A stretch of DNA of 38,235 bases from Guillardia theta CCMP2712. Taxonomy: Eukaryota; Protista; Cryptophyta. Below the pieces are notes generated by a model that searched no databases, had not been told where the DNA came from, and saw only the letters and a list, made by a program, of their open reading frames with translations. Below are positions 1-26,548 of the stretch, piece after piece. Numbering within the stretch: the first letter of the stretch is position 1; each line of letters opens with the position of its first letter. The translations under genes were made by a program, and so were the position numbers. The DNA lies in NCBI RefSeq assembly GCF_000315625.1, contig NW_005434588.1:139729-177963 (forward strand), written 5' to 3'.

Positions 1-259
1 AGGAGGAAGAAGGAGGAGGACCAACAGGAGGAGGAGCAACAGGAAGAGGAAGGAGGAGGAAAGAAGACGTTGAGAAGGAGGAGGACCAAGGGCGATAACA
101 GAGGTGCGTGAGGACCAAGACAAGGAGACAAAGAGGAAGATGAGAACGGCGTCAAGGATGATGATGATGACGATGACGATGACAAGGCTGAGGCTGAGGA
201 GGAGGAGAAGGAGGAGGAGGAAGACAAGGAGGAGGAGGAGGAGGAGGAGGAGACGAACC

Positions 260-1115
260 TACTCTTCCCATCCTCCCTGAGGCTCTGCTGTGCTTCTCCT
301 CTCCCTCCCAGCTTGTCAGCCCCGGAAGGGCTCGCAGGAGACATCCGGAACCCATGCGTGTCCGCCTCGACCTCCCCCCGCCTCAACACGCTGCTGTGCT
401 GCTTCTCTTGCGAGGGGAGAAGAGGAGGGGGGGGAGGAGGAGGAAGAGGAGGAGCAGCCTTTGAGGGCGACCACTCCAGTGCTTCATGCTGGATGCAGGC
501 AATCAGGAGAAGAAGGAGCGAGAGGAGGAGCGAGAGGAGGAGCGAGAGGAGGAGCGGGAGGAGGATGGAAAAAGTTGGATAGCAGGAGACGAGGACAAAA
601 GAGGTGCAACCTTATACTTTTCTAGCGGTGAGGTATGAGTGAAATTCTGCTCTCTACGTGTCATGCAGAAGCAAGGAGAGGAGGAGGAGGAGGAGGAGGA
701 GGAGGAGGAGGGGAGAAGGAGGAGGAGGAGGAGGAGGAGGAGGAGGAGGAGGAGGAGGAGGAGGAGGAGGAGGAGGAGGAAGATGAGGAGGATAAGGGGG
801 GGAGGGGCAGGAGGAGTTAAGTACCACTGAGGGAATGACGATCGTCACTGGCTCCTTCCTCTTCTGTTTGGACGACGATGCTTCATCATTTCTCGTCCTC
901 CTTGGGCTCGACTGTCCCGCGTTTGCTGACTCCCAGTGGTTTTCATACATTGTGAAGGCGCTTCTGTTGCAGTTCTTGCAAGCCTACCCTAATCTTTTGC
1001 TCCAGCTCGCCTTCAGTCTGTCATCTCCTCCTCTCCTCTCCTTTGCCTCCTCCGACCTCTTGGAGTTGCTCTGCTCGTGCAGTCTGCTCAACTTTCCTTC
1101 GGTCAAGTCGATTTC
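260..1115 (-). CDS. Probable multi-exon hypothetical gene, incomplete (continues off the left edge); boundaries approximate
   Basis: Non-repetitive minus-strand segments read as plausible exons (e.g. QEKQHSSVLRRGEVEADTHGFRMSP ~260-410; YENHWESANAGQSSPRR ~835-950; EIDLTEGKLSRLHEQ ~990-1115), separated by microsatellite-filled intron-like tracts. No family motif recognised. Confidence 0.4.
676..792 (+). repeat. (GGA)n trinucleotide microsatellite
   Basis: Near-perfect GAG/GGA run seen directly. Confidence 0.95.
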
Positions 1116-1802: not shown

Positions 1803-4249
1803 TCATGAGTTGCCGACATTATGATTTCCGACATCTTCATGGTGTAGCTTGAAGTCTAAGTGGTTGGCTGTCTCAAGAAGTTTGTTCAAGCTCTGCCCCA
1901 GGGCATCGTCAGCAACAGACAAGAAACAAGATCCTCGCACAGACAACCATGTCACCACAAGGGATGGTTTCAACAGTTTGGGAGGTTGCCACAACAGTCA
2001 GCAGGAGGGACTGACCTTCTTTGTCTCCCTCAGGCCTTCTATCGTAGTTCGAATGCTGCCTTGCACATGCCTTGTTGCCTCAGCAGCAGCTTTCGCGCCA
2101 GCCTCCTCCTCCTCCCGCCCCCCTCGTTCAATGCCTTGGACACGAACAGGCGCAACACGTCCTTGAAGACGCTGTGCCCGGTGCTTGCGACCGGAAGTTG
2201 AATGTCAACCTGCGCAAGCGGTGAGAGGAAGAGAGAGAGGAGGGGCGAAACAGCAAGAGGTAGAGCGAATCAAGGGTTATGAGGATGATCAGTAGGGATA
2301 GCGAGCTGAGATCAGGATGAGAGACAACAAGGAGGGGTAGAGGGAAGGGAGAGCAGTGGAGGGGGAGGAGGGAGGCAGAGAATGAGGATGAGGGGGAGGA
2401 GAGATGAAGGGGACGGGGAGGACCGGGGTGAAAGGAACGAGAAAGAGAAGAGGAGGAGGTAGGACCTTGTCGGGGATGATGCCTTGCATGTTGTGCAGCA
2501 GATGATCCTTGAAAGTTTGCATCTCCTTCTCAGCTCCTCCGCGGAAAGTGTCGTACTCTACCCTCTGCGGCTCCTTCCTTTCAGAAACGACTGGGTACAT
2601 GCGGCAGGGGGAGGGGGGGATGAAGGAGTCGTAACGCGTCCGCCTGTCACGCACGTTCAGAGGGGAGCGACCTACCACCAGTCTCGTCTTACATCCATAC
2701 AGGAGGCTCTTCCTTGCACTTGGGATGCTTGCGATGCTTCTTCTTGTGAACGTACTTGTGTGACGTGGAGGGAGTCTCAGCCTGAGGAGGAGGAGTTGTC
2801 TCAACATTCGTCTCCTCATGCTCCTCTTCGTGCTCCTGCCCTGCTGTCGTTCCTGGAACGCTCTGTCCCTCCGATTCGGGCTTGGATTCTGAGGAGGAAT
2901 TCGGGGTCGATGACGATTTTGGAGGAGGGGGAGGAGGAGGGGGGGGAGGAGGAGGGGGGGGAGGAGGAGAAGAGGGGGATGTTGATGAGGAAGATGGTGA
3001 CTGCGATGGTGGGGGAGGTGGGGGCGGTGGGGGGGGAGGAGGAGGAGGTGCTGAGGACGGTGGGGGAGAAGGCGGAGGAGCCAAGGGTGTGGATTCTCCT
3101 TTAGATGTCTCTCCCTGAACACCTTGACTTGTCTGTTCCTCCGAACTTCCTTGTTCTCCTTCCCTGTTGAAAGCATGTAAGAAAGGCCCCCCTCAGCCCG
3201 GCGCCCTCACTTGCTCGTGCTTGAGGTTTCTCCCGTCGTTCCTCCTTTGGTTTCTTCCTTGGGCTGAGACGAGACTTCAGGTCTCTCTGCTTCACCTTCG
3301 TCCTCCTCCGTCTTCGGCGCCACCGATCCAGTGGGCACCACATGCTCCTCCTCCTCCGAATGCGACGCTTCATCCCCCTTCCTCGTCCCCTTATTGTCAC
3401 TGAGCGCACAGTGAGCTGCAGGAGCGAGAGGACAAGTTCTGCTTCTCTCTCAACTGACCTTTGTCTCACTGGAGGTCTCTTGTCCTTGACCGGGGAGTGC
3501 TGATAGTGGGGTCGGACAGTTGGCTTGAACTCCTCAGGTTTCCATCTACAAGGCCATCGTAAGGATCAAAGCTCATGGAGCAGAATGGGAAAGCAGGATG
3601 GGAGAGCGGGTTCACCTTTTCTTGTAGCAAGCATATGTTAGTCGTCCTCCCTCGCAGTCGATTCTCTTGCCTTTGTCGTCATAAATGTGGAAATACTACT
3701 TACAAGTCAGTACCGCCTAGAGGCAAAACCTGTGTTGAATCTTTTCCTCTACCTGCGGATAAGTCGTGGGGTCCCAAGGGTATTCTCTTCGGATATGCGA
3801 GTATCTCTGACCATAGGCATCGAAAACCTCTCTCTTGTCCACCCATGGATTCACGTTTCTTGTCGCATGTCATCAGCGCAACTGAAAGAGCTCTGACTGA
3901 CTTACCTCTGGAAGAAATGCCCTTGATCAGCCTTGCCTATGGGACACGGCTTGTCCGTGCCACATGCATAGGTCTGCGCTTGTGACCACATCGGCTCTCT
4001 GTGCTCACCGACGATCCACGAGGTTCCTCCGTCCTCTACCTGCCCGCTGACTTCTGTCGGAAATCTCTCCTCCCCCATCGACGTGATATCAGTCGTCCCG
4101 TCTAGAGAGACTCTCCCAAGTCTGTCTAGATGGTGGGAGAAGAGAGCGAGGACGAGCAGTGAGGACTGGATCAGCAGGGCATGAGCAAGTCGTGCCATAC
4201 TCCTCACCCTCCCGGCCCTCCCCGCTCCTCCCCACGCTCCCTCCGACAT
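1803..4249 (-). CDS. Multi-exon hypothetical protein with N-terminal hydrophobic anchor and Pro/Ser/Glu-rich low-complexity middle
   Basis: Exons with GT-AG-type borders: MSEGAW...LAHALLIQSSLLVLALF...GHFFQR; NPWVDKREVFDAYGQRYSH; YFHIYDDKGKRIDCEGG; WKPEEFKPTVRPH; poly-Pro region 2690-3100; MYPVVSERKEPQ...GIIPDK; VDIQLPVASTGHSVFKDVLRLF; terminal exon ending VGNS*. Start could be 4249 or 4330. Confidence 0.6.
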
Positions 4250-4399
4250 CGAAACAGAGACGAAAGACGAAAGGACAGAATTTGGCCTGAACGGGGATGA
4301 GGGCAGGGATGAGGGTGCTGATGAGGGCATGGGGGTAGAACTACTATGTTCGAATTGACAGGCGGGCCAACCCCTGGTCGGTGAATTAAACAGTACAAA

Positions 4400-7300
4400 T
4401 AATTAGTTAAATACCCCCCCCCCCCCGCTTCGCCTCCATGCGGTCTGTGTGGGGCGCTATGGCAGTTTTTTCAGGGGGTTCTGCATGCCATGGCAGGGTA
4501 TCACAACAAAATTCAAATCCGATTTTTGGCGGGCAAACCTGTGACCCCCCTCGCCATGGGCAAGCCGAAGGTGCGGAAGACCGAAACATGCCAATCATGC
4601 CAAAAACCAAGAAAGAAGGCCAGTGTTCGAAGATGGCAAGGTGTGCCTGTTTGCACAACTTGTGTACATTTATTCAAAACCCAAAAGGATGAGTGTGGTT
4701 CTAAGCGGATTTTGCTCTCGAAGTGGGATGATACCTTGGTTTTCAAGCTGTTGGATTTCTTGCAATGTCAAGATCATGCAACTTTGTCTTTGGAGTGTGA
4801 AGACAACAATCTTCTCACTTCAGCGACCCAGCATCTGAAGTTAAGTCTTCGTTCTGTATCCTTGTTTGAAGTCCAAAAGAAGCTAAAAGTCCTTGGAGAT
4901 GTTTACGGACATACATCAGAAGGGTTTGCGAAATGCTTTCTCTACTATTACACCAAGGTTTTCGAAAAACAAGCATCTGGAAATCCACATGCAGGAACCA
5001 CTGCTATGTATGAGCATTTAAATCGACTTCGTACACAGCTTGGTAATATGCACAGAAAGCATCGAACTCTTTTTTCCCGAATCGAAAAGTGGTCTACCTC
5101 ACATTTCGAAGATTTGAATTCATTACAATCCACGATTCACGATTACTTTTTGCGGTAAGTCTGTGATGTTGCTTTCTTCCCCTCTCTGTAGTGTGATCAT
5201 TCTGCAGATATGCAAAATTGTCGGATGAGCATGTTGATCCATGTCCCCCAAAGAAGCACACCAAGGCAGACTCCGAGCTGTTCATTCAGACAGTTTGTGA
5301 AACGTTCAGAACCCTTGATGGCAACACCCGATGTGAAATCATCCGAAGGATTCTGAGTGAGCACGACTCTCTGTGTCAAGCACAAAAGAAAACATCGGAG
5401 CATGAGTTCTCTGCGATATGCAATGTCGAAAGAGCAGTTTCAAACTTACATGCTTGTGGATTGCCAGATGTAGTTTCTGAATTGGTGATGTTTGCCAGTA
5501 ATGATATCGACGCTTTCAGAACAACACACAAAATCATGCCGTACTTGGTAATGGATTGGTGTCGTCAAAGTTTTAGAGCGAAAGATTCGAGGGGCATGAG
5601 ATTCTCCCCGGAGATTATCAGTTTCGCATCAACACTCAAAAACCTTGGCAATGCGACAATGTTGCGGTTCCTGTCAGGGCCAGGGAACAAGTTTACAGAC
5701 AATTTCCATTCTGATCAGGCTTTACATAACTTGCCTCTGCCATGCATCTCTACTCTTTGCAAGCATCAAAGTGCTGACATGAAAACACGAGATGTGAAAA
5801 GGTCAAGAATATGTAGCGAAATTTTGGACAATTACAGCGAAATGATGAGTACTAACCTTGTAGATGGTATCCACGTGTTGGCGATGGACAAGACGATGAT
5901 CAATGCTGGTTTTTGTAAAGAATTCGAAGATTGCGAAGCAGATTTAGGCGGTGTCACTGAAAGAAAGATGGATTTGACGGAACGGCTTGCACTGCGAAAG
6001 GAACGTTTGGCACAGCTTTGTCTGGAAGGGACGACAGTTGCATCGATTCAGGAACGAGTCATAGCCTTGTTGACCGACGACTTGGAGAAAATTAATGAAA
6101 GGAAAGCAACGGCTGAACGGGATTACAAGAAAATTCGAGACAAGTATGTCGCAAAAATGACGAGCAACAATGCTGTGGCGAGGTCAGACACGAGAAGAAA
6201 TTCCTCCAATGAAGTCAGATTTACTCCACATCAATTGTACTTGACTGGGGTGATTGAGGGGTGTTGTCAAATTCAGATTCAAGTGCCGAACCTGATTGAA
6301 CGACTGAATAACTACATGAGTAGTGCCGCACCAGAGGAGCAACGTCAACTGCAAGATGAATTGAATTTGTACAATGACTTGTACTATAAGACGGCAATAG
6401 CAGAACTTGGAGAGGATGCCATCTGTGTTGTTGCGCAGGATGGACAAAAGGAGATGCCTCCAGCACCTGTGTACATTGGATTTGCACAAAAAAGTTTATG
6501 TTCGAGAGATGGACAGGATATTTTCTCAGCTGTCACCAGGGAAGCTTGGGAGAGAGGAGTGAACTTCAATGTGTGGTCGTTTGATGGAGAATTTGCCTGT
6601 ATACATCGGTATTTCTACAAAGACAAGCCCAGTACATTCATCCAGGAGGTGAAAGCAATCTGCAAAACGGCAACCAGTATGGATGATCGAACTCTATGTT
6701 CCTCTATTGCTGCATACATTTCAGGGCTATTCAAGTTCGAGCCTCCAATTTCAGAGCACGACATTGAGAGTGAGTGCACCTTGAACAATGCCGATGAATA
6801 CGATGGGGAAGACCTGTCGTCATTGTCAGTCACACCTCAGTCGGGAATGGTACACATGGATGTGCCGGAGATGAGAGATATCAAAAATTTTGTTTTGCAA
6901 TTGCGACGCAACCAGGCCATATGGCAGGTTCAGAATGAGAAGACGCTAAGATGTAGCACGAGCAAGAGGCCAAGATTGACCTTGAAAGACATGTTCTGTA
7001 GGCTGAAAATATTTTGCCGAAGGTATGGATACGAAGAAGTTCTGTCATTAGCCAATGACAATCAAGATGAGGAAGAAACATACACTCCATGGGAGATGGA
7101 GCGAAGGATAGCAGATGGGCTAAATGAGCTGGATGAAAACAAGATCCGCTTTAAATTTGACGAATGGCTGTCCAATCCCGTCATCTCTCCTACCACCAAG
7201 AAGTTGTTATTCTTCTCACCGTGCATTAACCACTTGTTGAAGAATGTCAGGCATTCGATTGGATCAGGGAAGTCACAATCGTCTTCACCGGAAGCCAAGA

Positions 7301-8640
7301 TATGGCATAAAGCTTACAGTGATATCGCCAAGAAGAATCCATCATGGATGTCTCAGATGGAGGTCGATGGAACCGCCGATCCACAATCTGTGGATATCAT
7401 GCTGAAGATGTTCAGTGAAAAAGCCATCAGTCTACTGAAGGCAGAAGGGCATGAAGCGACAGCCAGAATGGCAGAAAGTATGTCTGGCCTTCACAAAGCA
7501 TTCGATCAAAGAGGTCTGACAGTTTCAGAGAGGATACGTCTAGTACGCGAAGCTCGGAGTTGGTTGTTGGAAGGGATCGACTGGACCACGGTCAGCCAGA
7601 AACACGTGAAAGGATTATCTTCTGTCGCGTTTGAAGGTTTCATAGTGGCAATTGATACTCATCTGCAAGTACAGCAGTACGTGAAAAATAAGAGACATGT
7701 GCTTGGAGACGGAGACTATGACTTCAACTCACGAACTCTCTGCACCGATAGTGTGGAGAATCTGTGGTCATTGATTGGCCATCTGAACAAGAAGGATTTC
7801 TTGAGAAAATTCAATCAGGCTTGCACAGAGTTATGTAAAAAGGTGGACCCTGACCTGCCCTTTGTGTACGAGCATTCGAAAAAACGAATTGTCCTCAGCC
7901 AACCGCATGAACGGGACACTTTCAACGTACGGAATGGATCAGATAATGACGGGGAAGCTGAGAACAGCACACATAAGAACAAGCGAAGACGAATTTATGC
8001 TAAATCAGCACAATGGGATGGAGGCCTCAATGGTAACATGCCCGGGTTTCGGGGATTACGTGACATTGCTGGTTGCAAGTCGAAAAAGAGGTATACGAAA
8101 AGTAGAAAACATTAAAAAGAGCGATAGTGACATCCGAATCATTGGTATCATGAGATAGAACTCACATTTCTCTGATAGACTGTGAGGTTTTGACAATTGT
8201 CATCATCGCGCTTTTTGCTTTAATCATCCTTAAACCTGGTCGCGGCCTGGCTGCCATTGCGATTTCCTGCAAACTTACCCACCCCCTCCCCATCAACATA
8301 CCCTCTATCATTGAGGGAAAGACACCGGTCCTAGACCCTTTTATCGCGAGTTCCACCCCCGTGATGAGGGTGCATGTTTCATGGGTTGAGTGGGGATGTG
8401 GTTTCGATCGTTTCCTGTCGATTTGGCTGGCATATTTCATGTCTAGTGTAAATCTTGAAAATTTAGAGCAAAATATTCTCCAATCTAAGTCCATTTTCGT
8501 TGAGCCGCAGAGCCCGGGTACCCCTTCCTAGGGACCCCCTGGCACTTGGGCCTTTTGGTCGAAGTCCTGGGACCCCTCATGGGAAAGTCATATGGAAACT
8601 AGTACTTCCACCGGTGAAAGGGAGGGGTGGGTACTGGTGA
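4400..8640 (+). mobile_element. Putative P-like DNA transposon or domesticated transposase locus; ends not defined
   Basis: Intron-poor, microsatellite-free block carrying an intact transposase ORF between host genes. No convincing TIR or TSD found by eye. Confidence 0.45.
4490..8115 (+). CDS. P-element-superfamily (THAP9/P-like) DDE transposase; two exons (4490 or 4556..5154, 5208..8115), ~1170-1190 aa
   Basis: A 53-bp GTAAGT...TGCAG intron (5155-5207) joins the 222-aa and 965-aa ORFs in frame. P-transposase-like motifs occur in order: GMRFSPE..NLPLPCISTL; VLAMDKTMI (D at 5887); ADLGG; WSFDGE (D at 6583); FFSPCINHLLKNVRH (C/DxxH at 7222-7233); DPQSVDIMLKMFS; SRTLCTDSVENLWS (E at 7756). Confidence 0.8.
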
Positions 8641-13010: not shown

Positions 13011-14768
13011 AGGAGGGAGCTAGAACGTGTAGAGTATGTGAATGAAGCTTGTTGGTATGATGCGGGGCAAGAGAGGTCTTGGGCTGGGCACATTTCGCGT
13101 CTCAACCCTAGGACTGCCACGTCGTCTCCTTGGGTCGCCACGACACTCAGACCCCACATGGCCTGTACCGAGCAAGGAGGCAGAGCAAGACATCTTACGT
13201 GGACGAATCCTGTCAGATGATCGGAGGGGCAAGGCTGAAGGGCCTCTGTCCCTTGGGTAGCTGGACTATCCTTGGTACGTCTTTCCCCCCTCTCCACCTC
13301 CCGGCTTTCTGTGTGTGCCCTCCTCTCTCCGCTGCTTCCGGTAAGGGACAGCAATCAAGCCTAGGCGCTTAGCCTTGACCGATATCAAAGTCAGACAAAG
13401 GACCCTAGAAGGGCTAGTAGAACCCGGTTCGCTCGTCTTGTATACTACAGCAAAACCCTTGCGAACAGTGAAGGATCAAATCAAGGTGTACGTGGTTGGT
13501 AACGATGGGTGTGTTGATGTAGATTCTACGTGCAGATGGCTTCCTTCACTCCAGTAGGATGAGCAGCAAAAGCTTGTCAGAAGCGAGAGCTCGCACGAGG
13601 CGAGTCAGTCTGCTCGTGTAGCGAGGAGCCTGCTCTACCTTTATTTCCGATCTGAAGCCTCTTCAGCTACAAGGGTCAGTTCTCGCCTCAAGTTGTACAC
13701 CACGCTTTTCTAGCATCGCTCGTGAAGTAGATCGGGCATCACTGCACGGAAGCTAAAGCGATCCAACAGAGGTGCCTGGAGTATTGGCTGTAGACGTCTA
13801 CAACCTGTAAGTGACTGTAAAATCATGAAGGCACGTCAACTGTCTCCAAGACTGCTCGAAAAAGAGTCAAAACCGGTTGCAAGAGCGCGTTACTGAAACC
13901 GACTCTTTTCAGGTGTGGTTTCCAGGACCGGTCCGACTCCCCTGAAACCACTGCTATGATAGGGGGAAGGGGGGGTACCTAGAGGGGCCATCACATGAGC
14001 ATATCCTCTATTTTACTCCCCCACTAGCAGGCCTTCCTCGACGCCTCCCAGCCTTCCCGACGCAGGAGCACGACCGAGCTCCCGCCAGGAGCTGTCAGAG
14101 TCAAGTCGGAGGGCGAGGATGTGATAGCGGCAGTGCTGGCGGCGAGGGGGCGAGGAGCGAGGCTGCTGGAGGCCCGGACAGCAGGAAGGATACTAGTGCG
14201 AGGAGGGCTGAAGCGGACGGCAGGGGACGGAGACGGGGGAAGGTAGGGCATGGCGGGCGATAGGCGCATGTATGGTGTACAGTAGGCCGACACGAGGATA
14301 CTTTTCGATGTGTAAAGAGCGACGAGACTAGCCTCCGCGAGTCTGAGCCAAAAACACATGTACTTGACTTGAGTAGGCCCAGCATCAAGAAGTCCACCAC
14401 TTGATCGGGTACTCTCCTCCTGTATCTGTATCCTACGCATCCTACCTTCCTCTCCGTGTCCTCTTCTTAACCACCCCTGCTTCCCGCTGTCTGGGTCGCC
14501 GGCAGTGTCGCTGCTCGCTTCCTTGCCTCTAGCCTACCGCTGGCGATCCTCAGCGGCTGCCGAGCAGGCTGCCAACCCCACATGGCTCCTGCTGACGGCG
14601 ACTGCTGGCCGAGTCATGCTCATCGCATTCCTCTGCCGCGGCTGTGGTCCGCCCGCACGGTCGTTCTCTGCAGGAGGGGGAGGTGAGTGCGCTGCCGTCT
14701 GAGCTCTCGGGTCAGCTGAGAGTCTCGGCTGAGAGCTTCAGGGACTATGCAGGGCAGAGGGGGATGAC

Positions 14769-15978: not shown

Positions 15979-17585
15979 AGGACCCTCTGAAGGACCTCTC
16001 GAGAACTGCCGCGTCGTCTCCTTGGGTCGCAACGACACTCAGACCCCCACATGGCCTGTACCGAGCAAGGAGGCAGAGCAAGACATCTTACGTGGACGAA
16101 TCCTCTAAGATGGTCGGAGAGGCAAGGCTGAAGGGCCTCTGTCCCTTGGGTAGCTGGACTATCCTTGGTAGCTGGATTATCCTTGGTACGTCTTTCCCCC
16201 CTCTCCCTTAGCCTTGACCGACATCAAAGTCAGACAAAGGACCCTAGAAGGGCTAGTAGAACCCGGTTCGCTCGTCTTGTATACTACAGCAAAACCCTTG
16301 CGAACAGTGAAGGATCAAATCAAGGTGTACGTGGTTGGTAACGATGGGTGTGGGGATGTAGATTCTACGTGCAGATGGCTTCCTTCACTCCAGTAGGATG
16401 AGCAGCAGAAGCTTGTCAGAAGCGCGAGCTCGCACGAGGCGAGTCAGTCTGCTCGTGTAGCGAGGAGCCTGCTCTACCTTTATTTCCGATCTGAAGCCTC
16501 TTCAGCTACAAGGGTCTGTTCTCGCCTCAAGTTGTACGCCACGCTTTTCTAGCATCGCTCGTGAAGTAGATCGGGCATCACTGCACGGAAGCTAAAGCGA
16601 TCCAACAGAGGTGCCTGGAGTATTGGCTGTAGACGTCTACAACCTGTCAGTGACTGTAAAACCATCAAGGCACGTCAACTGTCTCTGAGACTCTAAGACT
16701 GCTCGAAAAAGAGTCAAAACCGGTTGCAAGAGCGCGTTACTGAAACTGACTCTTTTCAGGTGTGGTTTCCAGGACCGGTCCGACTCCCCTGAAACCACTG
16801 CTATGATAGGGGGAAGGGGGGGTACCTAGAGGGGCCATCACATGAGCATATCCTCTATTTTACTCCCCCACTCTATCATTTCAGCAGTCAGGCTACCCCT
16901 TCTTTGATGCATAGAAGCACCGGTCCTCCGTATCAAGTCTACCCGGTCCTTCATACTACTGGCCTACCCTTGACTCGGCAGACAGATCCTCCCGCCACAC
17001 CATGCCATGCTCCGTTACCCTCCTCGACCTGACCCTCTCTCGCGCCCTCCCCTCCTCTCCCTCCCGCCCCTCCCTCAAGCTCTCCCCCGCACAGCAGGCC
17101 TTCCTCGACGCCTCCCAGCCTTCCCGACGCAGGAGCGCGACCGAGCTCCCGCCAGGAGCTGTCAGAGTCAAGTCGGAGGGCGGGGATGTGATAGCGGCGG
17201 TGCTGGCAGCGAGGGGGCGAGGAGCGAGGCTGCTGGAGGCCCGGACAGCAGGAAGGATACGAGTGCGAGGAGGGCTGAAGCGGACGGCAGGGGACGGAGA
17301 CGGGGGAAGGTAGGGCATGGCGGGCGATAGGCGCATGTGGGGTGTACAGTAGGCCGACACGAGGATACTTGACGATGTGTAAAGAGCGACGAGACTATTT
17401 GCCTCCCATGGCTCCTGCTGACGGCGACTGCTGGCCGAGTCATGCTCATCGCATTCCTCTGCCGCGGCTGTGGTCCGCCCACACGGTCGTTCTGTGCAGG
17501 AGGGGAGGAGAGTGCGCTGCCGTCTGAGCTCTCGGGTCAGCTGAGAGTCTCGGCTGAGAGCTTCAGGGACTATGCAGGGCAGAGC

Positions 17586-19893: not shown

Positions 19894-22800
19894 ATGGGTG
19901 GACCAGGGATGCCTCCAAGGCGACAGGGTACCCAACAGCAGAAGAGTGTTGAAGCACCTGCTGTGAGCAATGGCAAGCATGTGGGCAAGAGCGTAAAAGT
20001 GAAGGTAAGAGAGGCAGAGGAAGGGGAGAATGGGAGAAGTATGAGGTGGTATTGGTCGGCTGCCTTGGGGTCGCTCTTGGTGTGCTCTTGATACGTGCCG
20101 CAGTGTACGGATGGGAACTTTTACATGGGAAAGGTGATGGAATGGAGTGAGAAGGAGAAAGTCTACAAGATCTTGCTGGAGGATGGCGACGAGGTCGTGA
20201 CGACACTTGAGGACAGGTGAAGGGGAAAGAACATGCAGTGTGACAGCTGAGATGATTGCAGTGATGAAGAAGTTGAGTTGTTTGATGATGAAAAGGAGGT
20301 GAGAGGAGGAGGAGGAGGAGGAGGGAGGGGGGGGGGGAGAAGGAGGAAAGGCAGAGAGTAGGAGCAGAGGGGAAACAGGTAACGTCGAGGTTGCAAATGT
20401 GACGTGAGAACAGGTGCAGGAGGAGTCGGAGGAAGATTCCTCTTGGTCTGCAGAGGAAGCAGATGAGAGCAGAAGGGAGGAGAGCGACGTGGAGGTGAAG
20501 GGGCGGCAGAGGACGAAGGGGGCAGGGAGGGGCAGGGGAGGCAGGTCGTCAGGAGGAGATCGATCGTGGAGCTGTGCCGAGGGTCCGTCGAGAGGAGCCA
20601 AGGGGAAGAAAAGTCTGGAGGCAGACGACGACGACTTTGAAGGGGAGCAGCCAAAGGTGCCGACGAAGAGGAAGGGAGGGGCAGGGGGAGGGGGCAGGAA
20701 GGCGCAGCCCAAGAAGCCGAGGGGAGAGTATGTGTGCGAGAGAGGATGCGGGTTTGAGGGAGACTTCAAGACGGTAGAGGCACATGAGAACGTGTGCGGG
20801 TACGTGCGAGGTGACCAATGGGAGTCGGACATGGACTCGGAGGAGGAGGAGACGTTCCTGCAGAAGTGGGAGCTGAGTGTGGAGAGGAGGATGGAAAAGA
20901 AGATGCAGGCACCTGAAGGGCTGCTCGTCTCCCTGCTCCCCTTTCAGATGGAGAGCCTCGCCTGGATGTGCGACCAGGAGGCTTCTGCGTACAGGGGAGG
21001 AATCCTTGCAGACGAGATGGGGATGGGAAAGACGCTGCAAGCAATCTCCTTGATCATGGCGAACAAGCGGCAAGGAGGAGGAGGAGGAGGAGGAGGCGGC
21101 GGCGAGAGCAACAGCACTCTCGTGATCTGCCCTGTGGTGGCGATGGTGCAGTGGAGGGGGAGATCGAGCGCTACTGCAGGGCAGGCTCTCTCTCCCTCAT
21201 CATGTACCATGGCCCCAAGAGGTGCATGGACACCGAGGAGCTGAAAAAGTTTGACGTCGTGCTGACGACCTACTCGATTGTTCAGGGGGAGTACTCCTCC
21301 TCAATCCGCGACGCCAAAGTCGCGTGCAAGTACTGCGGGAAGAAGTACCTTCCTCCCCAGCTGAAGGTCCACCACAAGTTCTTCTGCGGACCGGAGGCGA
21401 AGAAGTCGGAGAAGCTGGCGAAGCAGGAGAAGAAAGCTTCTTCTGCTAGCGCTGCATCCTCCTCGAGGAGAAGGTATGAGGACGACTCGTCCTACTCGGA
21501 TGAGGAGAGTGAGGAGGAGGAGATGGAGGAGGAGATGGAGGAGGAGCGAGGTGGNNNNNNNNNNNNNNNNNNNNNNNNNNNNNNNNNNNNNNNNNNNNNN
21601 NNNNNNNNNNNNNNNNNNNNNNNNNNNNNNNNNNNNNNNNNNNNNNNNNNNNNNNNNNNNNNNNNNNNNNNNNNNNNNNNNNNNNNNNNNNNNNNNNNNN
21701 NNNNNNNNNNNNNNNNNNNNNNNNNNNNNNNNNNNNNNNNNNNNNNNNNNNNNNNNNNNNNNNNNNNNNNNNNNNNNNNNNNNNNNNNNNNNNNNNNNNN
21801 NNNNNNNNNNNNNNNNNNNNNNNNNNNNNNNNNNNNNNNNNNNNNNNNNNNNNNNNNNNNNNNNNNNNNNNNNNNNNNNNNNNNNNNNNNNNNNNNNNNN
21901 NNNNNNNNNNNNNNNNNNNNNNNNNNNNNNNNNNNNNNNNNNNNNNNNNNNNNNNNNNNNNNNNNNNNNNNNNNNNNNNNNNNNNNNNNNNNNNNNNNNN
22001 NNNNNNNNNNNNNNNNNNNNNNNNNNNNNNNNNNNNNNNNAGGGGGGGGAGGCGAGAGAGAGGGGAAGGAGAGGAGGAACAGGAGGAACAGGAGGAACAG
22101 GAGGAACAGGAGGAACAGGAGGAACTTCCGAGTTAACCTGCTCCTCCAGGTCCTCGATCGTATCCTGCTGAGGAGGACGAAGCTAGGTCGGGCAGAAGAC
22201 ATCGTCCTGCCCCCCAAGGTGATCATCTTGCGCAAGGACTTCTTCGACCCCTTCGAGTCGGACTTCTACCAGAGCCTCTACACTCAGAGTCAGACTCAGT
22301 TCAACGCCTATGTCCAACAAGGCACCATCCTCAACAACTACGCGCACATCTTCGACTTGCTCATCCGCCTCCGTCAGGTTCAGAGCACACTAGTGTTCCC
22401 CTCCCGGCTCGTTCCATCCTTTTCCTCTTCGCTCACATCTCCTCTTCCCTCGAACTTCCTTCCTGTCCCCGCTCTCCCCTTCATTCCCCTTCGTCCCTCT
22501 CTCCTCTACTCTCTTCCCCTCCCCTTCGTTCCTCTCCCTTCCCCTCCCCTCCCAACTCTCCTCTCTGCTCCTCTCCTCACCTCACCACCTCTCCGCAGGC
22601 CGTCAACCATCCTTACCTTGTCCAGTACTCCGAGAAGAACTACCTCGCATCACAGGCGGCTGCAGCAGCAGGAGCAGCAGCAGGAGCTGACAGCCAGGAC
22701 TCGGAGCAGTGCGGATTGTGCAAGGACGAGGCCGAGGACAAAGTCGTGTCAGCCTGCAAACACTGCTTCTGCCGCTCCTGCATAGAAGAGTACGTCGCCT

Positions 22801-24579: not shown

Positions 24580-26548
24580 TTATCCGAGGGGTCCCTTGCC
24601 GGTGATGAGGGTGTGGTGGACGATGCCTGCAGTACTCGTCACTACCCCCCTTCTCCCCACCATTTCAACCCCTCCTGCCTCCTCTCTCCCCTCCCTCCTC
24701 TCACCGGAGACGGCGAGCATAGCAAGGCGGCCGTTCTTGATCTCAGAGAGCTGCTTGCGAGCCATGCTGCCCTTGCCGAGGCCGAGGGGGTCAAAGCCGA
24801 AGTCTCCGGGGATACGCTTGGAGGAGGGGTCGTTCAACATCTCGTTCATGGCAGGCCAGCCGATGACCATCTCGAGGAAGCCGGTCCAGAGGAGGATCTG
24901 GCCCATGGAGCCCTGGAGGAGCAAGTGAGGTTGGCGCAGGGAGGAGGAAGAGGAGTGGAGTGGGGGGAGCAGGGAGAGGATCAGCAGCAGGAGTGTAGGA
25001 GGAGGGTGATTGAGGCTAGGGGAGCAGAGAGGACGAGGGAGAGCGGACCTTCTCGACAGCGAGGTTGTGGATCTCAAAGATGTCCTGCGAACTAAAATCA
25101 GCCTCCCCCTTCCCCTCCTCTTCCTCCTCAAGAACAAGTTCACCCCCCACTCATCCTCCTCCTCCACCCTCCCCTCCTCTACCTTGGTGGGTCCGAAGAC
25201 AGACTCGACTCCGGGGGCCTTGATGCCGGCAGCCTCGACCATGATGCCGGCGAAGGCGAGCATGGCGATACGGCCGTGCTTGATCTCAGCCTCCCTGACG
25301 AACTTCATGTTGACCCAGGACGAGAAGCCGAAGGGATCGAAGCCTTGGTCTCCGACAGCAGTTCCGTCGAGGGAGGCGGGGCGGGGGAAGATGGGGATGA
25401 TGTTAACACCCTTGCCCTGGAGGGAGCCGTCCTTGTACAACTGCATGGAGGGTCCGGTGGCACGAGCAGCACCTGAGGAGAGGGTGAGGAAGAGGAAGAG
25501 CGGGAGGAGGAGGAGGAGCAAGTGGAGGTACAAACGAGGAGAAGGCTGATTGAAAGGAGGAGCTGGACGGGGAACAAGAGGGGAGGGAGGAAGGACATCA
25601 GTTCATCACTCACGGGTAGCCCTGGGGAGCATAGCAGATGGTGCGAAGGCAGCGGCCGAAGCCAAGCATGACAACAAAGCGACGGCTCTGCAAAGAAACA
25701 AAGTAAGGAGGCAAAAGATTTTTGTCGGTGTTAGGGAAACAAGCAGCAAGATGCAAACACGAGTCAGAAGATAATGGCTTCACACAAGTGCACTGATAAG
25801 AAAACTAGGTAGTTTGTGATGTCTGAACGTGTCAACATAACATTTATGAGAGGAAAAAGAAGGAAGTAACATAACTTGTATCCAAAACAATCTTTCAGCA
25901 AAACAAGCACTCATCCTGAACTACAATCATAGATATCGCCCATCTCATCCAAGTTGAGACCACAAGAAAAAATACTACAATTCACATTGCTCTATGCAGA
26001 AAACAAGACTTCATAGGTGACGCACTTCCAAGGGCCAACTCTGTTTACAGCTCTATAAAGATCGAAACCATTTCCCTCGTTATCCTCAGAGTCTGCGCTG
26101 ATCTGAAGAATTCTTTCCCTTCTCGATTCCAATATCGTCACAATCACGATCTCGTTCATAGCGTGCACAATATTCAGCTCAAAACTCATGTTTCATGTCA
26201 AGTCATCGTAAGTTCGTTCCTCTAATCTGACGTCTTGCTATCTGCCTCCAGCTTCTTCGCTTCAATATCCACATCATCACAACATCAGATACTGTCGTTT
26301 TTGCTAACATCCTCCCTCCCTCCCTCTCTACATCCTCCAATCCATCCCGTACCTCTGATCCTTGGCAGGCACAACATATCGTCCCTGATACACTCATCCT
26401 CCTGCTCCTGTTCATTCCCATTTCATCTACACATTGTGCTCGTTCTCTGCCATGTTCTCTTCTCCCACCATCTTTCTCCTCCTCCTCCTCCTCCTCCTCC
26501 TCCTATTCCTCCTCCTCCTCCTCGTCTCATCGCATCTCACCTCAGCAT
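24580..26548 (-). CDS. Chlorophyll a/c-binding light-harvesting complex protein with bipartite plastid presequence; 6 exons
   Basis: Exons 26548-26541, 25687-25614, 25472-25183, 25084-25049, 24912-24705 and 24626-24580 give [28 protein letters not shown]...[10 protein letters not shown]...[14 protein letters not shown]...[11 protein letters not shown]...[18 protein letters not shown]. Contains both LHC ExxH/NxR motifs and an AFAP cleavage motif. Confidence 0.95.

What the first reader, a model, noticed from the sequence alone, without database searches (positions are those of the whole stretch)
4490..8115. Intact, highly divergent P-element-like transposase in an algal (cryptophyte-like) genome
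Seen: two ORFs join in frame through a canonical 53-bp intron into a ~1170-1190 aa protein with no stops. It carries, in order, LP..TL, hhhhD (5887), DLG, hhDG (6583), C-x2-H-LLK-x2-R (7222-7251), Q-x-V...FS (7384-7416) and D-x2-E-N-x-(F/W)S (7747-7770). Established: this motif order is characteristic of P-element/THAP9 transposases (RNase H DDE core, (D/C)xxH motif, GTP-binding insertion), which are best characterised in animals. Inference: this is a distinct P-superfamily lineage with an intact catalytic triad that may be active. It is the best candidate for an undescribed system in this window.
Basis: partly seen in the sequence, partly recalled or inferred. Interest (0 to 1): 0.8.

Follow-up and report, generated by a model that had tools for sequence, protein, structure and literature searches.

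The report
Intact P-like transposon in cryptophyte alga
A 4-kb stretch of this Guillardia-type algal genome is a complete cut-and-paste jumping gene whose spliced 1,190-residue enzyme is predicted to fold like the fruit-fly P-element transposase, although sequence databases do not recognise it; this puts an unusual form of that transposon family in cryptophyte algae.

Summary
ORFs 4490-5158 and 5218-8115 join through a GT..AG 53-bp intron into a 1,190-aa protein without stops, and every listed motif sits at the stated coordinate. Contigs from two runs that are probably RNA carry the spliced junction; a DNA run carries only the unspliced form.

Pfam, NCBIfam and PDB sequence searches find nothing. 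An AlphaFold model built on 48 distant relatives matches Drosophila P-element transposase far better than any other solved structure (Z 26.1, 389 residues aligned; next is Transib at 11.1). D224, D456 and E847 (ORF2 numbering) lie on strand 1, just after strand 4 and on the catalytic helix, and are conserved across the family.

The gene sits in a 4,036-bp element (4328-8363). It has 15-bp imperfect terminal inverted repeats (CAYGGGGGTRGAACT) and a 7-bp flanking duplication (ATGAGGG). Five Guillardia theta loci hold non-syntenic copies, three of them with internal deletions.

It differs from canonical P/THAP9 in three ways: a C4 zinc finger instead of THAP, a ~150-residue helical hairpin between strands 1 and 2, and no Pfam TNP-like hit. 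In snail and annelid relatives, a YqaJ exonuclease domain occupies the hairpin position. Current mobility is not shown.

The parts
4321..4327 (.). Left copy of the 7-bp target-site duplication ATGAGGG. It would be 8 bp (GATGAGGG, 4320-4327) if the element's last G were counted as flank.
   Evidence: The target lies in a 12-bp-period repeat (ATGAGGG at 4297, 4309, 4321). Removing the element plus one copy restores a regular third unit.
4328..8363 (+). Complete transposon, 4,036 bp
   Evidence: The 3' limit of homology is 8363 in both L001 and L005. Other copies in runs X1 and X12 diverge from the window at 4326 and 4331 (table 7). Inverted repeats sit exactly at these limits.
4328..4342 (+). 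5' terminal inverted repeat CATGGGGGTAGAACT
   Evidence: It matches the 3' repeat at 13 of 15 positions.
4490..5154 (+). Exon 1 (residues 1-221 plus two bases of codon 222). It holds the N-terminal C4 zinc finger, a helical domain and long C-terminal helices (possible coiled coil).
4589..4663 (+). C-x2-C-x17-C-x2-C zinc finger (C34, C37, C55, C58), in the position where P transposase has THAP
   Evidence: Read from the sequence. All four Cys are kept in the L002 paralogue. No THAP or GATA Pfam hit. The model has low confidence there, showing a beta-hairpin plus a helix.
5155..5207 (+). 53-bp GT..AG intron
   Evidence: The spliced junction is in contigs of X6 and X12 and absent from DNA run X1.
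5208..8115 (+). Exon 2 including the stop codon. It holds the HTH-like region, the split RNase H domain with its alpha-helical insertion domain, and a basic disordered tail.
5887..5889 (+). Catalytic D1 (D224 of ORF2, D449 of the spliced protein), on predicted strand 219-227
   Evidence: Aligned and conserved in the 24 rows of A4 that cover this block, as read from the alignment display. Strand prediction.
5959..6399 (+). Helical-hairpin insertion (ORF2 248-394) between RNase H strand 1 and strand 2. Relatives carry a YqaJ nuclease domain at this position.
   Evidence: The structural matches of this segment alone are only coiled-coil proteins.
6583..6585 (+). Catalytic D2 (D456 of ORF2, D681 of the spliced protein), immediately after strand 452-455
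   Evidence: D456 and G457 are at least 90% conserved in 48 rows. The alignment is shown and the secondary structure.
7222..7251 (+). C669-x2-H672-LLKNVR motif immediately after strand 663-668, at the start of the alpha-helical insertion domain
   Evidence: H672 and R678 are at least 90% conserved. The first position is C in the protist clade and D in the animal clade.
7747..7770 (+). D844-x2-E847-NLWS, with catalytic E847 (E1072 of the spliced protein) on helix 844-853. The spacing is the same as D528-x2-E531 of P transposase.
   Evidence: P transposase residues are from PMC7776569.
8349..8363 (-). 3' terminal inverted repeat (reverse complement CACGGGGGTGGAACT)
8364..8370 (.). Right copy of the target-site duplication ATGAGGG
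6463..8166 (-). Span of six minus-strand (CT..AC on +) spliced junctions, indicating antisense, apparently non-coding transcripts over the 3' half of the gene
   Evidence: table 5: joints 6463-6534, 6709-6780, 6810-6978, 7487-7537, 7799-7855 and 7957-8166. No ORF longer than 107 aa in the spliced antisense sequence.

Best explanation
Window 4328-8363 is a full-length, autonomous cut-and-paste DNA transposon of the P-element (P/THAP9) structural class, sitting in a cryptophyte nuclear genome (Guillardia theta or a very close relative).

Its single two-exon gene encodes a 1,190-aa transposase. The domain order is: N-terminal C4 zinc finger, helical and possibly coiled-coil region, HTH-like DNA-binding region, RNase H catalytic domain (D224/D456/E847 in ORF2 numbering), and a basic disordered tail. 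The RNase H domain is split by an all-alpha insertion domain placed where P transposase has its GTP-binding domain.

Inferred mechanism, by analogy with P transposase: the protein binds the element ends (15-bp terminal repeats starting CA...TG), excises the element with its DDE site, and inserts it with staggered cuts that leave a 7-bp (possibly 8-bp) target duplication. Incomplete gap repair then produces the internally deleted copies seen at other loci.

Shown here: gene structure, splicing, fold class, conservation of the catalytic residues, ends, flanking duplication, and dispersed deleted copies.

Inferred only: catalysis, any use of GTP, the role of the zinc finger and of the helical hairpin, and present-day mobility.
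For: Gene and intron.

Fold: Foldseek puts 6pe2_A and 6p5a_A at the top (E 1.6e-3, probability 1.0, TM by target 0.62). VIA-align gives Z 26.1, rmsd 3.8 A and 389 aligned residues, with model 95-877 matching transposase 130-566. That range covers the HTH, RNase H and insertion domains. The runner-up has Z 11.1. The nearest Atlas clusters that carry a Pfam family are all TNP-like, by shape (TM by row up to 0.72) and by language-model features.

Homology chain: phmmer links the window to 100 proteins. Nine of 48 aligned family members hit Pfam TNP-like_RNaseH_N, one of them above the curated cut-off.

Catalytic residues: D224 is conserved in the rows that cover it, D456 is at least 90% conserved, and the E847 motif aligns as (N/S)xxxE(N/T)FF(S/G).

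Mobile-element hallmarks: 15-bp repeats sit exactly at homology limits that were defined independently. ATGAGGG lies on both flanks. L002, L004 and L005 are internal-deletion derivatives, and L001 is a 5'-truncated copy. All are at non-syntenic G. theta loci. L002 and L004 carry frameshifts and stops.

Selection: dN/dS is 0.15 with dS 0.66 against the L001 copy.

Distant relative: a relative on a marine metagenome scaffold is flanked by 20-nt terminal repeats whose sequence resembles the window's (13 of 20 positions).
Against: No Pfam TNP-like, THAP or Tnp_P_element hit for the window protein itself, and no PDB hit by sequence or profile.

The model is only moderately confident overall (pLDDT 65.9). 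Residues 508-583 and 886-965 are unmodelled, and the short segment 231-236 after strand 1 is below pLDDT 50. The distance between the three acidic residues could not be measured.

The target-site duplication rests on one copy, and it lies in a short tandem repeat that already contains ATGAGGG three times, so chance is less remote than 1 in 16,384. The terminal repeats are short and imperfect (13 of 15).

Only one intact copy was seen. Raw stranded RNA reads (X22) cover mainly the 3' half, differ from the window by about 3%, and include a minus-strand splice. They therefore support antisense rather than sense expression.

No empty site or polymorphic insertion was found.
Confidence: 0.82

Rival explanations
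1. The gene is a domesticated transposase-derived host gene, like human THAP9, and is no longer part of a mobile element.
For: The frame is long and intact, with strong purifying selection (dN/dS 0.15). It is spliced and expressed. Only one full-length copy was seen. The scan's note s1-437253 reports another P/THAP9-like gene in this genome 'without visible TIRs' (untested).
Against: Terminal inverted repeats and a flanking duplication sit exactly at the homology limits. Dispersed, non-syntenic, internally deleted and decayed copies exist. PMC7776569 names exactly these features as what human THAP9 lacks. Low dN/dS between subfamilies is also expected for active transposon lineages.
Confidence: 0.08
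2. It is a real transposon, but it belongs to another RNase H transposase superfamily that has an insertion domain and a (C/D)xxH motif and no solved structure, such as Kolobok or an unnamed superfamily. P transposase would then simply be the nearest solved structure.
For: The window protein has no sequence-level match to P/THAP9 models. It has no THAP domain. Identity in the structural alignment is 15%. Kolobok has no Pfam model (PMC5751038) and no solved Kolobok structure appeared among the matches, so it could not be compared directly. No phylogeny with P, Kolobok and hAT was possible.
Against: Kolobok is defined by TTAA targets, termini starting with RR, and THAP plus H2CH motifs (PMC6004289). 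This element has ATGAGGG flanks, CA...TG termini and no THAP. Family members hit Pfam TNP-like_RNaseH_N, one above the cut-off. The gap between Z 26 and Z 9.8-11 separates P from hAT, Transib and RAG1. All Atlas neighbours that carry a Pfam family are TNP-like.
Confidence: 0.1
3. It is a P-like transposon that is structurally intact but currently immobile, either silenced or catalytically dead.
For: The terminal repeats are imperfect (13 of 15). Spliced antisense transcripts cover the 3' half. Sense read depth in raw RNA is near zero over the 5' half. Every other copy examined is deleted or decayed.
Against: There are no stops or frameshifts in 1,190 codons, and the catalytic residues are all present. 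The flanking duplication is still perfect. The spliced sense mRNA is present in two data sets.
Confidence: 0.4

Closest known systems
Drosophila P-element transposase (PDB 6pe2/6p5a) and the P/THAP9 family (Pfam PF12017, PF21787, PF21788, PF21789)
   Same: Best structural match by a wide margin, covering the HTH region, the split RNase H domain and the all-alpha insertion domain between strand 5 and the catalytic helix. The domain order is the same: zinc-binding N-terminus, helical/coiled region, HTH, RNase H with insertion, then a basic C-terminus (PMC7776569). The D-x2-E spacing at the catalytic glutamate matches D528/E531. The ends read CA...TG. Internally deleted non-autonomous copies exist.
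   Different: No detectable sequence match to the Pfam models. A C4 finger replaces the C2CH THAP domain. A ~150-residue helical hairpin is inserted between strands 1 and 2. A further ~150 poorly modelled residues lie between D2 and strand 5. The terminal repeats are 15 bp rather than 31 bp. The duplication is 7 bp (possibly 8) rather than 8 bp. There is one intron rather than three. GTP binding is untested.
Zebrafish Pdre2/THAP9 elements
   Same: One full-length copy plus internally deleted copies, short terminal repeats (13 bp there, 15 bp here), and a flanking duplication (PMC7776569).
   Different: Pdre2 has THAP, 12-bp subterminal repeats and 8-bp duplications, and it is recognised by the Pfam models. 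No subterminal inverted repeats were found here.
Galileo and 1360 (P superfamily, Drosophila)
   Same: They are members of the P superfamily (PMC3688188). From my own knowledge, not checked here, they make 7-bp duplications like the one seen in this element.
   Different: They have long foldback-like terminal repeats and a THAP domain, and they occur in animals only.
Kolobok superfamily
   Same: A eukaryotic DDE transposase with a zinc-binding N-terminus and a (C/D)xxH-type motif. It is found in protists as well.
   Different: Kolobok has TTAA target duplications, RR termini, and THAP plus H2CH motifs (PMC6004289). None of these is seen here.
hAT (Hermes), Transib and RAG1
   Same: RNase H fold interrupted by an alpha-helical insertion domain, with a (C/D)xxH motif.
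   Different: Much weaker structural match (Z 9.8-11.1 against 26.1). No hAT dimerisation domain was found in Pfam.
ISL2EU (PHIS) transposons carrying YqaJ
   Same: The only published link between a YqaJ exonuclease and eukaryotic DNA transposons that I found (PMC4482050). It bears on the animal relatives of this family.
   Different: In ISL2EU the transposase is Harbinger-like. In the animal relatives seen here, YqaJ is a domain inside a P-fold transposase. The window protein has no YqaJ.

Membership tests
P superfamily (P element / THAP9) | RNase H catalytic domain split by a large alpha-helical insertion domain between strand 5 and helix 4, with overall similarity to P transposase | tested here: met
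   VIA-align Z 26.1, rmsd 3.8 A, 389 of 456 residues aligned, model 95-877 against transposase 130-566. Runner-up Z 11.1. Foldseek top hit. Atlas neighbours with a Pfam family are all TNP-like.
P superfamily (P element / THAP9) | Conserved D, D, E catalytic residues on strand 1, after strand 4 and on the catalytic helix | tested here: met
   D224 lies on strand 219-227, D456 follows strand 452-455, and E847 lies on helix 844-853. All are conserved in the family.
P superfamily (P element / THAP9) | Significant match to the Pfam TNP-like models (PF21787, PF21788, PF21789) or Tnp_P_element (PF12017) | tested here: not met
   No hit for the window protein at E<=1. Nine of 48 family members hit PF21787, and one (P0015) scores 25.8 bits against a cut-off of 24.6. 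None hits the GBD or RNaseH_C models.
P superfamily (P element / THAP9) | N-terminal THAP (C2CH) DNA-binding domain | tested here: not met
   No THAP hit. A C-x2-C-x17-C-x2-C finger sits there instead, and it is conserved in the L002 copy.
P superfamily (P element / THAP9) | GTP-binding residues of the insertion domain (K385, K400, V401, S409, F443, D444, N447, D528; PMC7776569) | tested here: inconclusive
   Only D844, three residues before E847, can be equated with D528, and only by spacing. No residue-level structural alignment was available. In the animal YqaJ clade this position is L or another non-acidic residue.
P superfamily (P element / THAP9) | Terminal inverted repeats and a 7-8-bp target-site duplication | tested here: met
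   15-bp repeats matching at 13 of 15 positions, at 4328-4342 and 8349-8363. ATGAGGG at 4321-4327 and 8364-8370. This rests on one copy in a repetitive target.
P superfamily (P element / THAP9) | Internally deleted non-autonomous copies | tested here: met
   L002 lacks window 5067-6849, L004 lacks 5246-6964 and 7642-7731, and L005 lacks 5564-7297.
Kolobok | TTAA target duplication, termini starting RR, and THAP plus H2CH motifs (PMC6004289) | tested here: not met
   Flanks are ATGAGGG, termini are CA...TG, and there is no THAP. The H2CH motif was not examined.
hAT | hAT C-terminal dimerisation domain and a Hermes-like fold as the best match | tested here: not met
   No PF05699 hit. Hermes Z 9.8 against P transposase Z 26.1.

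The most novel reading that the evidence does not exclude
The element may be the first complete, possibly still mobile representative of an unclassified deep branch of P-fold transposases.

The branch is marked by a large insertion between RNase H strands 1 and 2. In the cryptophyte and marine-protist clade the insertion is a helical hairpin. In lophotrochozoan animals (snail Batillaria, annelid Owenia) it also holds a lambda-exonuclease-like YqaJ domain. This suggests a transposase that carries its own 5'-3' resection activity.

The cryptophyte form uses a C4 finger instead of THAP and could be a native transposon tool for Guillardia.
Probability: 0.35. Interest if true: 0.72.

Novelty: new variant of a known kind. 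Interest (0 to 1): 0.55.

Why it matters
P-element and THAP9 transposases are best characterised in animals, with a few fungal reports (PMC5751038). None of my paper searches found one described in cryptophytes.

This copy is complete, with ends, a spliced gene and a catalytic triad. Its family escapes the standard domain models. Repeat and gene annotation of protist genomes therefore probably misses such elements; the Guillardia paralogues are all filed as 'hypothetical protein'.

The element offers an evolutionary outlier for asking which parts of the P transposase are essential, such as THAP or GTP binding. It is also a candidate endogenous cut-and-paste vector for a model alga of secondary endosymbiosis.

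The family also reveals animal proteins in which a YqaJ exonuclease is embedded inside the RNase H domain. I found no description of that architecture.

Tried and rejected
**Searches that found nothing useful**
- Pfam, NCBIfam and PDB phmmer on both ORFs gave only sub-threshold noise.
- Profile searches of PDB with the family alignment (A4) and with block B alone (A5) found only lambda-exonuclease matches to the relatives' YqaJ domain, or designed coiled coils. P transposase was not found.
- The word-indexed protein search with profile A4 added only one more G. theta fragment.
- The Atlas feature search of exon 1 was uninformative.
- The AlphaFold model of exon 1 had too little confidence (pLDDT 57.7) to name the zinc-finger fold, so I did not search with it.

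**Technical dead ends**
- The first inverted-repeat scans missed the terminal repeats, because the longest exact run in them is 6 nt. They were found only after copy boundaries were mapped.
- A MAFFT alignment of separate block fragments (A3) was misaligned in 127 of 143 rows and was discarded. Collinear sub-ranges (A4) were used instead.
- No subterminal inverted repeats were found.
- Yuan & Wessler 2011 could not be read because it is not held.

**Ideas tested and dropped or left weak**
- Synteny with the closest G. theta gene (L001) was tested and is absent.
- The spliced antisense RNA does not encode a protein; its longest ORF is 107 aa.
- A relative on scaffold L007 has clear 20-nt terminal repeats but no flanking duplication.
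- hhalign of the L007 upstream ORF against A4 was not significant (probability 3%). It did pair a YDKS...EADYGG stretch with the window's MDKT...EADLGG, which I treat only as a hint.
Full report
**1. The observation**

The + strand holds ORF 4490-5158 (222 aa, ATG start) and ORF 5218-8115 (965 aa). The sequence reads ...TTGCG|GTAAGT...TTCTGCAG|ATATGC, with GT at 5155-5156 and AG at 5206-5207. Removing 5155-5207 (53 bp) completes a split CGA codon. It puts 5218 in frame and gives 1,190 codons with no stop. An upstream AG at 5190-5191 would break the frame.

In ORF2 numbering (add 225 for the spliced protein):
- D224 at 5887
- D456 at 6583
- C669-x2-H672 at 7222
- Q723...F732-S733 at 7384-7416
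- D844-x2-E847 at 7747-7758

The intron has read support. Contigs of two public runs from two studies (X6, X12) carry a joint '5153->5207, skips 53, GT..AG', with 168 and 255 nt on the shorter side. DNA run X1 has a contig running straight through 4969-5310. The tool labels X6 and X12 as RNA only by guess. A spliced form in them, absent from the DNA run, fits that label.

**2. Identity by sequence**

Pfam, NCBIfam and PDB sequence searches give nothing for either exon. The word-indexed search finds only Guillardia theta proteins: GUITHDRAFT_113559 (845 aa, 81% identity) and an MMETSP transcript product.

The exhaustive phmmer search finds 100 proteins at E<=1e-3. These include several more G. 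theta CCMP2712 fragments at 63-88% identity (GUITHDRAFT_122546, 103516, 119681, 113917) and further MMETSP transcripts. The rest are distant relatives at 23-33% identity, matching mainly ORF2 residues 650-890.

Iterating a profile on these hits shows three collinear blocks:
- Block A, residues ~60-295, with LP..TL and D224.
- Block B, ~330-540, with D456.
- Block C, ~560-960, with CxxH, Q..FS and E847.

In a clean collinear alignment (A4, 48 rows), D224 is conserved in the rows that cover block A. D456, G457, H672, R678, Q723 and F732 are at least 90% conserved. The glutamate sits in an (N/S)xxxE(N/T)FF(S/G) motif.

Nine of the 48 members hit Pfam TNP-like_RNaseH_N with block B. One of them, the snail protein P0015, scores above the curated cut-off. 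The window protein itself does not hit.

**3. Identity by structure**

AlphaFold2 on A4 gives mean pLDDT 65.9 and pTM 0.68. Blocks of residues 400-500 score 80-91 and 650-820 score 86-98.

Foldseek against 350,542 PDB chains ranks the Drosophila P-element transposase strand-transfer complex first (6pe2_A and 6p5a_A: E 1.6e-3, probability 1.0, TM by target 0.62). RAG1, Transib and Hermes follow.

Re-alignment with VIA-align gives Z 26.1, rmsd 3.8 A and 389 of 456 residues aligned at 15% identity. Model 95-877 matches transposase 130-566. [quoted passage not shown] The next families are Transib (11.1), RAG1 (10.0) and Hermes (9.8). The nearest ESM-Atlas clusters that carry any Pfam family all carry TNP-like or Tnp_P_element domains, with TM by row up to 0.72 over 450-470 residues. 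The language-model feature search agrees.

The predicted order of elements is:
- strand 219-227 (D224)
- helical hairpin 248-394
- strands 400-408 and 416-423
- helix 429-445
- strand 452-455 (D456 next)
- a partly disordered region
- strand 663-668, then C669xxH672
- all-alpha domain 670-843
- helix 844-853 (D844, E847)
- short C-terminal elements and a basic disordered tail

The alignment ends agree to within five residues (877-847=30 against 566-531=35). E847 therefore corresponds to E531 and D844 to the GTP-contacting D528 of P transposase (residues from PMC7776569). I could not measure the geometry of the triad because coordinates are not exposed.

**4. It is a transposon, not just a gene**

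BLASTN of the window against five G. theta loci fetched through the paralogous proteins shows no flanking synteny. It does show a characteristic pattern:
- L001 matches window 5434-8363 at 82% identity.
- L005 matches 5248-5563, then jumps to 7298-8363.
- L002 matches 4338-5066, then 6850-8264.
- L004 matches 4432-5245, then 6965-7641 and 7732-7982.
- L003 matches 7099-7889.

Three copies are therefore internal-deletion derivatives, and two independent copies end at the same base as the window, 8363. In the read-laying output, contigs of other copies diverge from the window at 4326 (X1) and 4331 (X12) (table 7).

Exactly at these limits lie CATGGGGGTAGAACT (4328-4342) and the reverse complement of CACGGGGGTGGAACT (8349-8363). 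They match at 13 of 15 positions and are the only two matches to the degenerate pattern in the window. The element is 4,036 bp and reads CA...TG at its tips.

ATGAGGG lies immediately outside both ends, at 4321-4327 and 8364-8370. The terminal G is shared by all three 3' ends, so the duplication is most likely 7 bp; 8 bp (GATGAGGG) cannot be excluded.

There is a caveat. The target is a 12-bp-period micro-repeat that already holds ATGAGGG at 4297 and 4309. Removing the element and one copy restores a regular third unit, which favours a true duplication. It remains one copy's worth of evidence.

L002 and L004 carry frameshifts and stops in the exon-1 region. L002 keeps all four zinc-finger cysteines. 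The window and L001 copies differ by dS 0.66 but dN/dS 0.15. The protein was therefore under selection while the two subfamilies diverged.

PMC7776569 lists terminal repeats and multiple internally deleted copies as the hallmarks that separate mobile P-like elements (Drosophila P, zebrafish Pdre2) from domesticated THAP9. Both hallmarks are present here.

**5. How it differs from canonical P/THAP9**

- There is no THAP domain. Exon 1 has a C-x2-C-x17-C-x2-C finger (4589-4663), with no Pfam THAP or GATA hit. In a low-confidence model it forms a beta-hairpin plus a helix, followed by a helical domain and long helices. This parallels the order 'zinc domain, coiled coil, HTH' of P transposase, but the fold is not established.
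- A ~150-residue helical hairpin is inserted between strand 1 and strand 2 of the RNase H fold.
- About 150 extra, poorly modelled residues lie between D456 and strand 5.
- The Pfam TNP-like models do not see the protein.
- The terminal repeats are 15 bp, the duplication is probably 7 bp, and there is a single intron.

Kolobok, the main unsolved rival superfamily, is defined by TTAA targets, RR termini and THAP/H2CH motifs (PMC6004289). None of these is met. A formal phylogeny against Repbase superfamilies could not be run.

**6. Expression**

Contigs of X6 and X12 tile 4434-8195 with 0-3 differences and include the spliced exon junction. MMETSP transcripts exist for other copies, including the L002 deletion derivative, whose product is P0003/GUITHDRAFT_122546.

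The one raw, stranded RNA run (X22, about 6% of it read) covers mostly 6600-8400. Its reads carry fixed differences of about 3%, so they come from a near-identical copy or strain. Its one joint, 7799->7855, has CT..AC ends. Five further CT..AC joints appear in X12, and two of the six are also in X6. Minus-strand, spliced and apparently non-coding transcripts therefore overlap the 3' half of the gene. Whether they silence the element is unknown.

**7. Wider family**

The closest non-Guillardia relatives (P0010, P0013, P0016, P0017, P0012) come from marine metagenomes. They share the C-type CxxH and the D-x2-E motif, and some carry a helix-hairpin-helix domain. One of them lies on a 5.8-kb scaffold between 20-nt terminal repeats that are 95% complementary. 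Their sequence, CACCGTAGCGAAACTCG..., resembles the window's 3' repeat at 13 of 20 positions. No duplication is visible there.

The more distant relatives are 1,200-1,700-aa animal proteins, for example from the snail Batillaria attramentaria and the annelid Owenia fusiformis. In these, a YqaJ/lambda-exonuclease domain (Pfam PF09588; PDB 3syy and 1avq by profile) lies between block A (D1) and block B (D2). That is the position of the window's hairpin. No paper in the library holds both 'YqaJ' and 'P element'. The only published YqaJ-transposon link I found is ISL2EU, whose transposase is Harbinger-like.

**8. Verdict**

This is an intact, spliced, expressed transposase gene of P-element fold inside a complete transposon with ends, a flanking duplication and deleted relatives, in a cryptophyte genome.

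It fails two of the listed P/THAP9 criteria (Pfam recognition and THAP). It meets the structural, catalytic and element-level ones. I therefore file it as a new variant of a known kind, not as an ordinary member. Present-day mobility, GTP dependence and the roles of the zinc finger and the hairpin remain inferences.

Noticed in passing
window 6463-8166, minus strand: Six spliced junctions have CT..AC ends on the + strand, meaning GT..AG on the minus strand: 6463-6534, 6709-6780, 6810-6978, 7487-7537, 7799-7855 and 7957-8166. They appear in RNA-like contigs, and one is also in raw stranded RNA reads. Together they indicate a multi-intron antisense transcript over the 3' half of the transposase gene, with no ORF longer than 107 aa. 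It may be read-through or a silencing-related RNA.
   Followed up: partly
relatives P0015 (L006:8001-13650, Batillaria attramentaria), P0036 (Owenia fusiformis) and about 20 others: Animal relatives of 1,200-1,700 aa carry a YqaJ/lambda-exonuclease domain between the strand bearing catalytic D1 and the strands leading to D2 of a P-fold RNase H domain. I found no paper that mentions YqaJ together with the P element.
   Followed up: partly
L007:445-5725 (marine metagenome scaffold encoding P0013): A 5.3-kb unit is bounded by 20-nt inverted repeats that are 95% complementary (445-464 and 5706-5725). Their first 17 nt resemble the window element's 3' terminal repeat. Two consecutive ORFs (580-2262, 2467-4653) probably form one split transposase. 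No target duplication is visible.
   Followed up: partly
L002:5997-8123 (G. theta JH993321.1, GUITHDRAFT_122546) and MMETSP transcripts P0003, P0113: An internally deleted copy is transcribed. It would encode a protein that joins the end of exon 1 to the C-terminal 40% of the transposase, with no D1 or D2. This resembles truncated P-element products, but no function was tested.
   Followed up: no
window 13659-13726 and 16498-16565; L002:13367-13434: A 68-bp sequence occurs twice in the window and, inverted, in another G. theta scaffold at 81-84% identity. It is a small dispersed repeat unrelated to the transposon.
   Followed up: no
window 24580-25533, minus strand: This ORF has a strong chlorophyll a/b-binding (light-harvesting) Pfam hit (E 1e-34), which fits a nuclear algal genome.
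   Followed up: no
window 21555-22040: A run of N marks a scaffold gap. ORFs listed across it (for example 20968-22785) are artefacts.
   Followed up: no
window 4283-4327 against X12 contig (table 7): The 5' flank of another transcribed copy contains ...AACGGGATGAGGGC..., which closely resembles the window's flank 40 nt upstream of the element. Either the family prefers GATGAGGG-type micro-repeats as targets, or a flank was duplicated along with a copy.
   Followed up: no
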